A stretch of 45,195 bases of DNA from Macrostomum lignano (Eukaryota): NCBI GenBank assembly GCA_002269645.1, contig NIVC01004455.1:1-45195 (forward strand), given 5' to 3'. The notes under the pieces are model-generated. The model saw only the letters and a list, made by a program, of their open reading frames with translations. It made no database searches and was not told the DNA's origin. Position 1 is the stretch's first letter. Each line of letters opens with the position of its first letter. Positions 27,088 to 33,325 of the stretch are shown piece after piece. A program made the translations under genes and the position numbers.

Positions 27088-30000
27088 TCAACAGTCGCCT
27101 TGGTCAGGCTGTTGCTCTGAAGGAGAAATTTGGTTCAAGCTGGGCAATGGTGGAAAGATCAGACGGCTTAAAATTTATTAATAAGGTTCACTGCTGCTTG
27201 TCAAGTTCTTACCCTGCTCCTCGTTAGACTTCTTCGTGCGTCTTTGGCGCGTCTTCTTGCCCTCTCTGCTACGGGATCCAGCGCCACCTGTTTGAAGAAA
27301 AGTATAGATAGACTCGCTTTAAAAGGAATTATGCATGTTACATTATGGACCTATTTTTTGCTTAAATCGAACAAATTTAGTAGGCTGTCGCGGTATGGGT
27401 AAACACTTTTCTCCCGTACCTGATCTGATTACGTTACCAACGAGAAGGGCATGCTTGTGGGATGTCCTTTTGATACAAGTTACTTGTAGTTTAATCAAAA
27501 GCGGAATATTTCCTGGCTAATACCAGATTTTTTAACCGCACACACAAAGATACGAGGATTAAATTGCCAAGTATGGCTGTACGGATGAATATCAACTTCT
27601 AACAGTAGTTTTTATGGCTTCTCACTAGCAGATGCTATGAAGCATGCCACAGTCGCTAACCATAGAAGTTTTCTCACTTTGCCCACTTACCTGTCGAACG
27701 CAAATTGGTTCCATTCTTGCCAAGAGGATTGCCACTGTGGGCAACGCCTAGGAACTGGTAGCTTAAACTCCAGCGTCGATAGTTTTTGGAAGTAATGCCA
27801 CTTTGCCGACTGCCCGAGTAGGACCCGCGACCCGGAAGCACACGAAGGCGAAGATATTTGGTTTGGCCAACTTTCAGCAGACCGTCGTGCACAGCTGCCA
27901 TGCCCAAAGTCGAGTCGCCGGTGTAAATGTCCGTCCCCCAGAGTTTGCCACTGGCGGTGCCAGTGATGAGAAGGTCGAAGCAAGTCCCGACCATCCGACG
28001 GTAGGCTTGCATATTCACCGGCGTGCGACGCAAGCGAGAGCAACCTATGGCGAGAAAAGTTGTTGAGAAAAAATGCTTACTTAGCGGCTACATAAAAAAT
28101 TAGACAACGTGCGATATAAGTTTCATTCAGATAATCATTCATTTATCTGAACCCAAAAAGCGTTCACAAAATTACTGAATTCAAAGTTCCACTGCACCAC
28201 TGCAGTGATTTCCACTGCACCATTTCTCCTCAAAATGTTTCTTTTGAACATCTGCTTGTTCAAATGTCTGCTCTATGAATGTTCAATCTGCTCTAAATCG
28301 TAGATTCAATCAACGAAGTAAGCTACAAGCGTATATAATTCAAATGAGGACTTTACCTATAGTTACCTTAAACCAGTATGTAAAGGAGTGACAACGCCTC
28401 GCGTTATGACACTGGTATAAACTACGAGCTAATGACTCTTTCCCAGTAAACTATCGATCAATTCATTAAAAAGGAACTATACCGATTAAAATAATGCTTA
28501 CCATCCCGACCAAGCATAGGCCTATAAAACGCTCGTCTAATTTTGCCACCTTTCGAAACGACGCGCTTCGTAGTGGTCCTCTTGTGCGTCTTGCTTCGTA
28601 CGCGGGTAGAGCTAGAGCTTCCAGAGACTCCAACAAATTTGTAGCTGAGTTTCCAGCGGCCATATTTCTTTGTTCGGACGCCGTGTCGCGTGCTTCCTCT
28701 GTACGAGTTGCGACCCGCCAGCAGCCGGACACGCACGTAGCCAGTTTGTCCTACCCGCAGGAGACCCGCGTGTACAGCAGCCGTGCCGATTCTCGAGTCG
28801 GACGTGTAGATATCGGTGCCCCAAATGCGTCCGGACGTGCCTCCTGTGACTCGGAGCTCGTAACACTTGCCGATGCTTTTCTTGCTCTTTGGAAGCGATT
28901 TGACGCGCCTGCATCCTCCTGCAAAGCGTCACAAATTATTGTTTAGATCTGTACACAACGAGTGGCTTCGGTTCCTAGTATAAAACATACGCCGTGCACT
29001 GTCATTAAACGATGCTCTATGTTAAAAGCGTGATACGGCCTACACTTATCTAACCGGAGGGTGAGAAACGCCCCTCCGCGATACCTTTAGAAACGATGCG
29101 CTTCGTAGTGGTCCTCTTGTGCGTCTTGCTTCGTACGCGGGTAGAGCTAGAGCTTCCAGAGACTCCAACAAATTTGTAGCTGAGTTTCCAGCGGCCATAT
29201 TTCTTTGTTCGGACGCCGTGTCGCGTGCTTCCTCTGTACGAGTTGCGACCCGCCAGCAGCCGGACACGCACGTAGCCAGTTTGTCCTACCCGCAGGAGAC
29301 CCGCGTGTACAGCAGCCGTGCCGATTCTCGAGTCGGACGTGTAGATATCGGTGCCCCAAATGCGTCCGGACGTGCCTCCTGTGACTCGGAGCTCGTAACA
29401 CTTGCCGATGCTTTTCTTGCTCTTTGGAAGCGATTTGACGCGCCTGCATCCTCCTGCAAAGCGTCACAAATTATTGTTTAGATCTGTACACAACGAGTGG
29501 CTTCGGTTCCTAGTATAAAACACGCCGTGCACTGTCATTAAACGATGCTCTATGTTAAAGGCGTGATGCCTACACTTATCTAACATGAGAAACGCTCCCG
29601 ATACCTTTAGAAACGATGCGCTTCGTAGTGGTCCTCTTGTGCGTCTTGCTTCGTACGCGGGTAGAGCTAGAGCTTCCAGAGACTAACAAATTTGTAGCTG
29701 AGTTTCCAGCGGCCATATTTCTTTGTTCGGAGTGGCTGCTCCTCTGTGAGTTGCGACGAGCAGCCGGACACGGTAGCCAGTTTGTCCTAGCAGGAGAGAC
29801 AGCAGCCGTGGTAGAGGTTGAGGAAAGGCGGGTGCTCAAGCAGTTAGCAGTTAAAAAATGTGTGCATAGCTGAATTTTTCTGCATCTGAATGCATATTAA
29901 TTTGGATTTGTGATGTAACCACGCTCTGGTCGCGGGATAGGGCATGGGAACTTTTTCGAAAGTGCCTCCTATCCCGTGCACCCTCTGCACAGAGCTGTCG

Positions 30001-33000: not shown

Positions 33001-33325
33001 TACAGGTGGGGTCCATGTGGGTCCTTGGCCCTCTGGTCACGAAGCGCTACCAAAAGCTACTAATCATGTGGGCGGGACAGTCTGGTGCTGGAGGTCCGTC
33101 AGGTCGTTGCCCGGTCATAGGCAGCCTACGGTCATTGCCCCCTCTAGTCATGCGTTCGTCTCTCTACGGAGCGGGCAGGCGACAAGGGCGGTTACATCAT
33201 TTGGATTATAAATGGTAAGTCTGTGCAGCAGATATTCTACACTTACCTGACCCGGCGCTGTCGGTAACCGACTGGAAAAGGAAGAGACATGCGGCCAGCA
33301 GTACAGCTCTACTGACCAGTTGCAT
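27088..33325 (-). CDS. Secreted cationic triple-LCCL protein, ~440 aa; exons 33325-33247, 29453-29085, 28918-28502, 28044-27691, 27287-27213, 27116-27088
   Basis: Exon 1 MQLVSRAVLLAACLFLFQSVTDSAGS + GTAAGT (phase 1). Three phase 1-1 exons with LCCL core WGTDIYT.DS.(I/L)G.AAVH.G..Y.GS...G; a basic 75-nt exon; a stop exon. Total 1323 nt, in frame. Confidence 0.8.
29605..29810 (-). pseudogene. Degenerate fourth LCCL exon copy
   Basis: 3' half matches exon 29453-29085 including the donor; the 5' part decays through many small deletions and has no acceptor. Confidence 0.75.
30337..30847 (+). promoter_or_regulatory. LTR U3-like enhancer/promoter: AP-1 x3, C/EBP x3, CRE, CCAAT, TATA
   Basis: TGACTCA at 30337, 30348, 30757; TTGCGCAA at 30365, 30645, 30703; TGACGTCA at 30767; CCAAT at 30787; TATAAAA at 30841; donor GTAAGT at 31170. 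Confidence 0.65.
31527..32554 (-). mobile_element. Nested LTR-retroelement fragment: 813-bp LTR (32554-31742), tRNA-Gln PBS (31735-31718), ~190-bp repetitive leader
   Basis: LTR TGTGACG...CGTGACA with minus-strand AATAAA near 31886; PBS TGGAGGTCCCACCGAGAT is the exact complement of a tRNA-Gln 3' end including CCA. Confidence 0.85.

What the first reader, a model, noticed from the sequence alone, without database searches (positions are those of the whole stretch)
27088..33325. Hidden 440-aa secreted triple-LCCL protein with extreme positive charge
The signal exon lies 3.8 kb from the first intact LCCL exon, beyond a 3.3 kb insertion, and is below the ORF-track cutoff. Six exons splice in frame. 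Domains are joined by Ser/Thr/Lys/Arg linkers (SSSSTRVRSKTHKRTTTKR) and end in a basic tail (SREGKKTRQRRTKK). Per-exon net charge is about +27, higher still, and +13 (hand counts). An LCCL-only, polycationic secreted architecture suggests binding to polyanions such as LPS, sulfated glycans or mucus.
Basis: partly seen in the sequence, partly recalled or inferred. Interest (0 to 1): 0.75.

Follow-up and report, generated by a model that had tools for sequence, protein, structure and literature searches.

The report
Polycationic secreted triple-LCCL flatworm protein
The window carries a real, expressed gene of the flatworm Macrostomum lignano for a secreted protein made of three LCCL modules with an extraordinary positive charge (+74); it is already in GenBank as a hypothetical protein, and nobody has studied what it does.

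Summary
Six minus-strand exons (33325..27088), all joined in phase 1, translate exactly to GenBank PAA47432.1 (BOX15_Mlig028021g3, 440 aa, Macrostomum lignano). So the gene is not hidden. It comes from an RNA-seq-guided annotation, and two of its tryptic peptides appear in a published mass-spectrometry dataset of worm footprints.

Pfam finds three LCCL domains (1.1e-47). An AlphaFold model gives three confident modules that match the cochlin LCCL structure.

The charge claim holds: net +74, pI 11.4. That is about seven standard deviations beyond 119 homologues, and two thirds of the charge sits on the folded modules.

The "3.3 kb insertion" is wrong. The same intron 1 is present in all three near-identical paralogous loci. 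The window instead has a ~476-bp deletion that truncated an extra first LCCL unit. Unit number varies between loci (2, 2 plus a remnant, 3).

The closest relatives are uncharacterised bacterial tandem-LCCL proteins (45–61% identity per domain) and bdelloid rotifer proteins, not cochlin-type animal proteins.

Polyanion binding is plausible but untested, and it would rest on charge, not on the fold. I rate this a new member of a known kind, of moderate interest.

The parts
33247..33325 (-). Exon 1 (79 nt): start codon and the whole signal peptide (MQLVSRAVLLAACLFLFQSVTDSAGS-G). The donor is GTAAGT and the exon ends in phase 1.
   Evidence: The hydrophobic core AVLLAACLFLF has a Kyte-Doolittle mean of 2.99 over 11 residues. 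AlphaFold models residues 2-24 as a helix. The exon is part of the deposited CDS.
29454..33246 (-). Intron 1 (3793 nt). It includes internal tandem repeats (31539-31727) and a 55-nt direct repeat (31472-31526 / 32555-32609). It is not a locus-specific insertion.
   Evidence: It is ~99% identical in paralogous loci L001 and L002. Its ORFs have no Pfam family. No other copy was found in the window or in the flanks of the paralogues.
29605..29808 (-). Remnant of an extra first type-A LCCL exon. Its 5' part and acceptor are missing, and the rest has frame-breaking small deletions. It lies inside intron 1 and is not in the CDS.
   Evidence: The alignment with locus g2 shows a ~476-bp deletion plus 8 small deletions.
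29085..29453 (-). Exon 2 (369 nt): LCCL module A1 plus a basic Ser/Thr linker. Net charge +27. Cys29/Cys45 pair.
   Evidence: pLDDT is above 90 over most of the module. It contains the MS peptides IWGTDIYTSDSR and IGTAAVHAGLLR.
28502..28918 (-). Exon 3 (417 nt): LCCL module A2 (99% identical DNA to exon 2, part of a 535-bp tandem unit) plus a 16-aa extension, GKIRRAFYRPMLGRDG. The GTAAGC donor at 28501 is used, not the GTGGCA at 28549.
   Evidence: (this is the only exon-3 end that reproduces the deposited protein).
27691..28044 (-). Exon 4 (354 nt): divergent LCCL module B (57% identical to A). Net charge +13. Cys290/Cys310 pair.
27213..27287 (-). Exon 5 (75 nt): disordered basic tail, GAGSRSREGKKTRQRRTKKSNEEQ. 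It contains an RQRR motif.
   Evidence: (pLDDT below 50).
27088..27116 (-). Exon 6 (29 nt): acidic C-terminal end QQPDQGDC and the stop codon. The terminal Cys440 is the seventh, unpaired, cysteine of the mature protein.

Best explanation
**What it is.** This is locus g3 of the Macrostomum lignano gene Mlig028021, one of three ~99% identical copies.

**Shown**
- It is transcribed and spliced as six exons.
- It is translated into a 440-aa precursor.
- Exon 1 supplies a cleavable signal peptide.
- The mature ~46-kDa protein has three compact LCCL modules. They are joined by flexible Ser/Thr/Lys/Arg linkers, and the protein ends in a disordered tail.
- Net charge is about +74, and about two thirds of it lies on the surfaces of the folded modules.
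- Peptides of the protein occur in material that the worms leave on a surface.

**Inferred**
- Each module is probably pinned by one disulfide.
- The protein works outside the animal, in mucus or surface secretions, as a multivalent polycation.
- The three rigid, basic LCCL modules and the basic linkers would bind polyanionic partners electrostatically. Candidates are sulfated or acidic glycans of the worm's own secretions, and microbial surfaces.
- Three or four binding modules per chain would let it cross-link these partners. The free C-terminal cysteine might add dimerisation.
For: **Gene, transcript and protein**
- The exon model equals the deposited CDS.
- The annotation pipeline is based on RNA-seq (PMC5730564).
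- Two fully tryptic peptides unique to this protein were found in the sheet footprints_Trypsin_intact_1 of Wunderer et al. 2019 Dataset S2. The reported coverage of 9.21% equals 48/521, meaning each peptide occurs twice, as expected for two A modules.

**Secretion**
- The N-terminus has an n-region, an 11-residue hydrophobic core and a small-residue c-region, all on its own phase-1 exon.

**Fold**
- Pfam LCCL x3.
- AlphaFold2: 226 residues at pLDDT >= 90, with linkers below 50.
- Foldseek to cochlin LCCL 1JBI: TM 0.74, rmsd 2.4 A.

**Charge**
- Net charge is +0.168 per residue, against -0.001 +/- 0.024 (maximum 0.061) in 119 homologues.
- The 80-aa domain cores carry +12, +12 and +6, against -0.4 +/- 2.4 in 245 homologous domains.

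**Precedents**
- Cochlin and akhirin LCCL domains bind or entrap bacteria (PMC7526977; PMC12839204 abstract).
- Charge interactions matter in M. lignano surface secretions. Mlig-ap1 has KR-rich regions, and heparin blocks attachment (PMC6410801).
Against: - No binding, localisation or knock-down data exist for this protein.
- The footprint MS sample also contains yolk, tubulin, ribosomal and glycolytic proteins. Presence there therefore does not prove secretion or any role in adhesion. The hit is also weak (2 PSMs, score 6.2).
- Isolated cochlin LCCL did not bind GAGs.
- No trained signal-peptide predictor was available.
- I could not recover its tissue expression from the held supplements.
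Confidence: 0.5

Rival explanations
1. It is a dedicated antimicrobial agglutinin of the epidermal or gut mucus. Like the cleaved LCCL fragment of cochlin, the modules entrap bacteria. The polycationic surface adds membrane or cell-wall binding, as in cationic host-defence proteins.
For: - LCCL of cochlin aggregates both P. aeruginosa and S. aureus (PMC7526977).
- Akhirin LCCL binds bacteria (PMC12839204).
- The protein has extreme cationic charge and three modules.
Against: - The Mlig modules are only ~28% identical to cochlin LCCL.
- There are no infection-response or expression data.
- The high ionic strength of the marine habitat weakens purely electrostatic binding.
Confidence: 0.2
2. It is an accessory component of the duo-gland temporary adhesive system: a cationic cohesive or filler protein that is co-secreted with Mlig-ap1/ap2 and is neutralised by the anionic releasing factor.
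For: - Its peptides were found in footprint MS.
- The adhesive organ of the flatworm Minona ileanae expresses an LCCL protein, Mile-ao1 (PMC6745481).
- Cationic KR- or GRK-rich proteins are central to flatworm adhesion.
Against: - RNAi of Mile-ao1 gave no adhesion or vesicle phenotype.
- The footprint sample is heavily contaminated with cellular proteins.
- The transcript is not among the tail-limited candidates in the held supplement of PMC5977470.
- The authors of PMC6410801 do not mention it.
Confidence: 0.15
3. It is a polyprotein precursor. Proprotein convertases cut at the basic linkers and release single ~12-kDa cationic LCCL peptides, which are the active species.
For: - There are 17 dibasic sites, and [KR]-x-[KR]-R motifs at residues 275, 292 and 420 that flank module B and the tail.
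- The linkers are disordered.
- Cochlin LCCL is also released by proteolysis.
Against: - The motifs are expected by chance in a protein that is 21% K+R.
- The A1-A2 linker has no strict R-x-[KR]-R site.
- There are no N- or C-terminal peptide data.
Confidence: 0.1
4. It is a reproductive secretion (seminal fluid, shell or cement gland protein), or this particular locus (g3) is a redundant or decaying copy with no function of its own.
For: - There are three near-identical loci. One (g2) carries a frameshift in module B, and the window carries a broken extra unit.
- Basic, fast-evolving secreted proteins are common in reproductive glands (general knowledge).
Against: - The g3 CDS is fully intact and is identical to g1 apart from one residue.
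- It is not in the held seminal-fluid candidate list.
- The g2 frameshift may be an assembly error.
Confidence: 0.05

Closest known systems
Uncharacterised bacterial tandem-LCCL proteins (e.g. metagenomic P0002, 468 aa; Pararhodobacter aggregans, Planctomycetaceae, Devosia, Treponema and Spirochaetes MAGs)
   Same: - They share the signal peptide followed by 3-4 LCCL modules and nothing else, with Ser/Thr/Asn-rich linkers.
- Per-domain identity is 45-61%, as high as between the protein's own A and B modules at 57%.
- An independent transcript annotation also lists a bacterial best UniRef50 hit.
   Different: - The bacterial proteins have no cysteines in the modules and near-neutral charge (family mean -0.001 per residue).
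- Their genes have no introns and sit in bacterial gene neighbourhoods.
- The flatworm gene has one module per phase-1 exon, a separate signal-peptide exon, a Cys pair per module and +74 charge.
Bdelloid rotifer multi-LCCL proteins (Adineta steineri P0003, A. vaga P0005)
   Same: These are the only other named eukaryotes among the best 120 hits. They are LCCL-only tandem arrays, 39-50% identical per domain.
   Different: - They have 5-6 modules and no signal peptide (they start MDEQHN...).
- They are not basic.
- In A. vaga all the repeats lie in one uninterrupted reading frame, so no intron positions are shared with the flatworm gene.
Cochlin / vitrin (akhirin) / CRISPLD2 / Limulus factor C: the canonical animal LCCL proteins
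   Same: - They share the fold (1JBI: TM 0.74, rmsd 2.4 A; phmmer 2.7e-5).
- They are secreted.
- Their LCCL domains are reported to bind or entrap bacteria.
   Different: - Identity is only ~28%.
- The canonical proteins have one or two LCCL domains, always combined with other domains (vWA, CAP and so on).
- The cysteine before the GAAVH helix motif in cochlin is absent here (alignment).
- They are not polycationic.
Flatworm adhesion-related proteins: Mile-ao1 (LCCL, Minona ileanae) and Mlig-ap1 (KR-rich regions, M. lignano)
   Same: - Mile-ao1 is an LCCL protein specific to a flatworm adhesive organ.
- Mlig-ap1 is a secreted, extremely basic protein whose function is blocked by heparin.
- Peptides of the window's protein are in the same footprint MS dataset.
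   Different: - The sequence relationship to Mile-ao1 was not testable here.
- Mile-ao1 RNAi had no phenotype.
- Mlig-ap1 is a >5000-aa multidomain protein with no LCCL reported.
Rxt3 (Sin3/Rpd3L histone deacetylase subunit, Pfam PF08642)
   Same: It is an LCCL-like fold. It overlaps as a secondary Pfam hit (74.8 bits) and is the top Foldseek hit, 8i03_I at 3e-5.
   Different: Rxt3 is a nuclear, single-domain subunit with no signal peptide. Here LCCL scores far higher (160.6 bits), and the protein has a signal peptide.

Membership tests
LCCL domain (Pfam PF03815) | Profile score above Pfam's gathering cut-off | tested here: met
   160.6 bits against a cut-off of 22.6, E 1.1e-47, in three stretches.
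LCCL domain (Pfam PF03815) | LCCL fold as in the cochlin NMR structure 1JBI (a central helix wrapped by beta-strands) | tested here: met
   - AlphaFold2 gives three modules, each strand - helix - long strand - strand, mostly at pLDDT above 90.
- Foldseek to 1JBI: E 4.1e-5, TMt 0.74, 97 columns.
LCCL domain (Pfam PF03815) | Conserved core motif W/Y-G-x-x-x-Y-x-x-D/S-S ... A-A-V-H-x-G | tested here: met
   The motif is IWGTDIYTSDSRIGTAAVHAG in A1/A2 and LWGTDIYTGDSTLGMAAVHDG in B. G, Y and H are invariant in a 57-sequence alignment.
Canonical animal LCCL proteins (cochlin, vitrin, CRISPLD, factor C) | Four conserved cysteines (two disulfides) per LCCL module. That this feature is defining is recalled from the literature, not verified here. 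| tested here: not met
   - There are only two Cys per module (29/45, 152/168, 290/310).
- The Cys in cochlin's SSICGAAVH aligns to Gly/Thr here.
Canonical animal LCCL proteins (cochlin, vitrin, CRISPLD, factor C) | LCCL combined with other extracellular domains (vWA, CAP/SCP, CUB, serine protease) | tested here: not met
   Pfam finds only LCCL and the overlapping Rxt3 above threshold.
Bacterial-type tandem LCCL-only proteins | Signal peptide plus three or more tandem LCCL modules with no other domain, and high per-domain identity | tested here: met
   - Architecture.
- Identity of 45-61% to domains from many bacterial phyla.
- Bacterial gene contexts.
- Whether the flatworm gene descends from them (HGT) is unresolved.
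Flatworm temporary-adhesion proteins | Protein present in adhesive footprints | tested here: inconclusive
   Two unique peptides are in footprints_Trypsin_intact_1, but the sample also holds many cellular proteins.
Flatworm temporary-adhesion proteins | Expression in adhesive gland cells and a non-adhesive RNAi phenotype | not testable with these tools
   - No in situ or RNAi data were found for Mlig028021, RNA815_26218, RNA1310_29404 or RNA1509_10169.
- The Minona LCCL protein Mile-ao1 had no RNAi phenotype.
Rxt3 family (PF08642) | Intracellular or nuclear HDAC-complex subunit without a signal peptide | tested here: not met
   The protein has an N-terminal signal-peptide-like exon, and LCCL outscores Rxt3 by 160.6 to 74.8 bits.

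The most novel reading that the evidence does not exclude
The gene descends from a bacterial tandem-LCCL gene captured by horizontal transfer in the Macrostomum lineage, independently of the intron-less bdelloid rotifer copies. It was then domesticated by gaining a signal-peptide exon, phase-1 introns between modules, one disulfide per module and a ~+74 polycationic surface. The product is a flatworm-specific secreted glue or agglutinin whose module number is still changing by unequal crossing-over (2, 2 plus a remnant, or 3 A units at the three loci).
Probability: 0.2. Interest if true: 0.6.

Novelty: new member of a known kind. Interest (0 to 1): 0.35.

Why it matters
If the inferred function holds, this would be an LCCL protein whose activity depends on an engineered-looking polycationic surface. 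It sits in an experimentally tractable flatworm where charge-based secretion chemistry (temporary adhesion and release) is already a research topic.

It would give a small, three-module, recombinantly accessible probe for what LCCL domains actually bind. That question is still open for cochlin, vitrin and the Plasmodium LCCL proteins.

The bacterial-like sequence and the variable module number also make it a tidy case for testing gene transfer and exon-unit turnover in a neopolyploid genome.

As a genome-scan finding it is ordinary in one respect: the gene model was already deposited.

Tried and rejected
1. My first model used the GTGGCA donor at 28549, giving 424 aa. I rejected it because only the GTAAGC donor at 28501 reproduces the deposited 440-aa protein.
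2. The "3.3 kb insertion / transposon in intron 1" reading is rejected. The sequence is shared by all three loci, has no other copy in the held sequence, and its ORFs hit no Pfam family.
3. I looked for expression or localisation data for Mlig028021 / RNA815_26218 and found nothing. This covered full text and the held, partly truncated supplements of PMC5816591, PMC7336406, PMC5946080, PMC5977470 and PMC4490696.
4. A scan of prokaryotic genomes with the 57-protein alignment failed because no stretch was conserved enough. I redid it with a 4-domain alignment.
5. A single-domain (module B) homology search, meant to surface single-LCCL eukaryotic relatives, found only 7 candidates and was uninformative. 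The eukaryotic distribution therefore remains open.
6. A domain-level distance analysis gave no clear nearest clade. A versus B is 57% identical, the best bacterial domain is 57%, and rotifer domains are at most 50%. It neither supports nor refutes HGT.
7. Contamination by bacterial DNA is rejected. The gene has spliceosomal introns, lies next to a CCP1-like carboxypeptidase gene at all three loci, and sits among retrotransposon sequence.
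Full report
**Origin and gene model**

The window is a complete 45,195-bp contig of the Macrostomum lignano Mlig_3_7 assembly (GCA_002269645.1). The best database hit to the predicted protein lies on a contig of exactly this length.

Reading the minus strand between 33325 and 27088, I placed six exons:

| Exon | Coordinates | Length |
|---|---|---|
| 1 | 33325-33247 | 79 nt |
| 2 | 29453-29085 | 369 nt |
| 3 | 28918-28502 | 417 nt |
| 4 | 28044-27691 | 354 nt |
| 5 | 27287-27213 | 75 nt |
| 6 | 27116-27088 | 29 nt |

Every acceptor ends in AG, every donor starts with GT, and every intron is in phase 1. 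The 1323-nt CDS translates to a 440-aa protein identical to P0001 = GenBank PAA47432.1, "hypothetical protein BOX15_Mlig028021g3". UniRef calls it "LCCL domain-containing protein".

My first choice of donor for exon 3 (GTGGCA at 28549) gave 424 aa. Only the stronger GTAAGC donor 48 nt further on reproduces the deposit.

**The gene is not hidden**

- The BOX15 annotation was produced from RNA-seq with StringTie/TACO, a de novo transcriptome and TransDecoder (PMC5730564). The exon 1 to exon 2 junction across the 3.8-kb intron is therefore transcript-derived.
- Dataset S2 of Wunderer et al. 2019 (PMC6410801), sheet footprints_Trypsin_intact_1, lists the transcript RNA1509_10169 (= RNA815_26218 = RNA1310_29404). 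It is 1563 nt long, has a Pfam LCCL score of 135.5 and a calculated pI of 11.18.
- That entry carries two high-confidence peptides, IWGTDIYTSDSR and IGTAAVHAGLLR.
- Both peptides are fully tryptic. Each occurs twice in the window's protein (residues 58/181 and 70/193). The reported coverage of 9.21% equals 48/521, which is two copies of each.
- This is protein-level evidence, and it independently supports two type-A modules per transcript.
- The caveat is that the footprint sample also holds yolk, tubulin and ribosomal proteins. It shows the protein exists and can be found in deposited material. It does not show that the protein is a specific adhesive component.

**Domains and structure**

- Pfam finds only LCCL (160.6 bits, three stretches) and the overlapping, related Rxt3 model.
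- The PDB sequence search finds cochlin LCCL 1JBI at 2.7e-5.
- An AlphaFold2 model built on 57 homologues has three confident modules: 226 residues at pLDDT >= 90, each strand-helix-strand-strand.
- The model has low-confidence (pLDDT below 50) stretches at 127-144, 250-274, 276-279, 394-425 and 427-434.
- Foldseek matches 1JBI (TM 0.74 on the target, rmsd 2.4 A) and Rxt3 in the SIN3L complex.
- Each module carries two cysteines (29/45, 152/168, 290/310). Bacterial homologues lack these.
- The cysteine that precedes the helix motif in cochlin is missing here.
- The mature protein ends in an unpaired Cys440.

**Charge**

- The protein has 36 K and 56 R against 12 D and 6 E. Net charge is +74 and pI is 11.43.
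- By exon the net charge is 0, +27, +31 (27+4), +13, +6 and -2.
- Among the 119 best non-Macrostomum homologues, net charge per residue is -0.001 +/- 0.024 (maximum 0.061). This protein is at 0.168.
- The charge is not only in the linkers. The folded modules carry +19, +19 and +11.
- The 80-aa cores carry +12, +12 and +6, against -0.4 +/- 2.4 (maximum +6) for 245 homologous domains.

**The "insertion" and the tandem units**

Two further loci encode the same protein:
- g1 (PAA87585.1) is on a 775-kb contig.
- g2 (PAA55641.1) is on a 146-kb contig.

Both have the same upstream neighbour, a CCP1-like cytosolic carboxypeptidase gene. All three loci are ~99% identical through intron 1, so the 3.4 kb after exon 1 is ordinary shared intron.

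The loci differ in the 535-bp exon-plus-intron unit that encodes module A:

| Locus | Type-A units |
|---|---|
| g1 | 2 |
| g2 | 3 intact, plus a 1-nt frameshift in module B |
| g3 (the window) | 2, plus a remnant at 29605-29808 |

Alignment shows that the window lacks ~476 bp present in g2. The missing part is the last ~320 nt of intron 1, the acceptor and the first ~155 nt of the first A exon. The remnant also carries eight small deletions.

That density of indels next to 99%-identical flanks is odd and may be an assembly artefact.

The deposited g2 protein has only two A modules although the DNA has three. Short-read transcript assembly therefore cannot count identical units, and "triple" could be "quadruple" for some transcripts.

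**Relatives**

- Outside Macrostomum, the best hits are LCCL-only tandem proteins from metagenomes and bacterial MAGs (41% identity over the full length) and from the bdelloid rotifers Adineta steineri and A. vaga (35-36%).
- Two of the metagenomic hits sit among sigma-70, type II secretion ATPase (T2SSE) and other bacterial genes.
- A scan of one genome per prokaryotic species found 214 confirmed relatives. The best 80 kept have 44-61% identity per domain. They come from Planctomycetota, Spirochaetota, Verrucomicrobiota, Alphaproteobacteria (Devosia; Pararhodobacter aggregans at 61%), Firmicutes, Bacteroidota and others.
- Module A is 57% identical to module B, up to 57% to bacterial domains, at most 50% to rotifer domains, and ~28% to cochlin.
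- The published transcript annotation likewise gives a bacterial best UniRef50 hit (1e-35) against human vitrin at 7e-07.
- In A. vaga all five repeats lie in one uninterrupted frame, with no signal peptide. No intron positions are shared with the flatworm gene.
- These facts are compatible with horizontal acquisition. They are equally compatible with a slowly evolving old subfamily that is poorly sampled in animals.
- I could not list single-LCCL eukaryotic relatives, so this remains open.

**How it most likely works**

*Shown:* the gene is expressed, spliced and translated. The protein has a signal-peptide-like N-terminus, three LCCL folds, disordered basic linkers and an extreme cationic surface, and it is present in worm-deposited material.

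*Inferred:* it acts extracellularly as a multivalent polycation that binds and cross-links polyanionic glycans and/or microbial surfaces.

The LCCL fold alone does not predict glycan binding. Isolated cochlin LCCL did not bind GAGs (PMC9987951).

LCCL-bacteria interaction is reported for cochlin, with both Gram-negative and Gram-positive bacteria, and so is not LPS-specific (PMC7526977). It is also reported for akhirin (PMC12839204).

In M. lignano, charge chemistry governs adhesion. Mlig-ap1 has KR-rich regions, heparin blocks attachment, and cationic peptides block release (PMC6410801). A related flatworm expresses an LCCL protein in its adhesive organ, although its RNAi gave no phenotype (PMC6745481).

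I cannot decide between three roles: a general mucus role, an antimicrobial agglutinin and an adhesive accessory.

**Novelty and verdict**

- The gene is already deposited, has transcript identifiers in three assemblies, and has peptides in a public dataset.
- What appears undescribed is its character. It is an LCCL-only, bacterial-type, polycationic secreted protein with variable module number. No paper in the searched library discusses it.
- I file it as a new member of a known kind (secreted LCCL-domain proteins) with an unusual compositional specialisation, of moderate interest.

Noticed in passing
window 2874-11009 and 15009-23258: This is a ~12.1-kb tandem segmental duplication (96.6-98.6% identity). 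Each copy holds a 15-bp minisatellite (about 6594-7600 and 18792-19730) and an LTR-retrotransposon gag/protease/RT fragment (e.g. 20569-23178; Pfam RVT_1, gag-asp_proteas).
   Followed up: partly
window 13976-14368 (+) and 24274-24651 (+): An ORF with a clear WSC domain (6e-21) and an ORF with a weak PAN-like hit. They probably belong to exons of unannotated or separate secreted-protein genes on the plus strand.
   Followed up: no
window 26129-26490: A (CTGT)n microsatellite of about 90 copies lies ~600 bp downstream of the LCCL gene's stop codon.
   Followed up: no
window 38074-44308 (-); L001 and L002 1-7444: The upstream same-strand neighbour at all three loci is a CCP1/AGTPBP1-like cytosolic carboxypeptidase gene. 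It carries 38-bp, 28-bp and 45-bp minisatellites (38074-38697, 39688-40726, 42926-44027). Their copy numbers appear to differ between the loci.
   Followed up: partly
window 29605-29808: The remnant LCCL unit has eight small deletions (1-11 nt) within ~290 bp, while the flanks are ~99% identical to paralogue g2. That is too many for neutral decay over such a short divergence, so it may be an assembly artefact of the tandem units.
   Followed up: partly
L002 13841-16146: Paralogue g2 has three intact type-A LCCL exons and a 1-nt frameshift in module B. Its deposited protein (344 aa) contains only two A modules, so the annotation skipped one identical unit.
   Followed up: partly
L085 4086-5573 (Adineta vaga CP075496.1): The rotifer homologue encodes five LCCL repeats in one uninterrupted reading frame and has no signal peptide. 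This looks like the bacterial gene layout, in a lineage known for foreign-gene uptake.
   Followed up: partly
protein residue 440 (window 27091-27093): The last residue is a cysteine, which gives the mature protein an odd number of cysteines (7). It may be a handle for covalent dimerisation or cross-linking.
   Followed up: no
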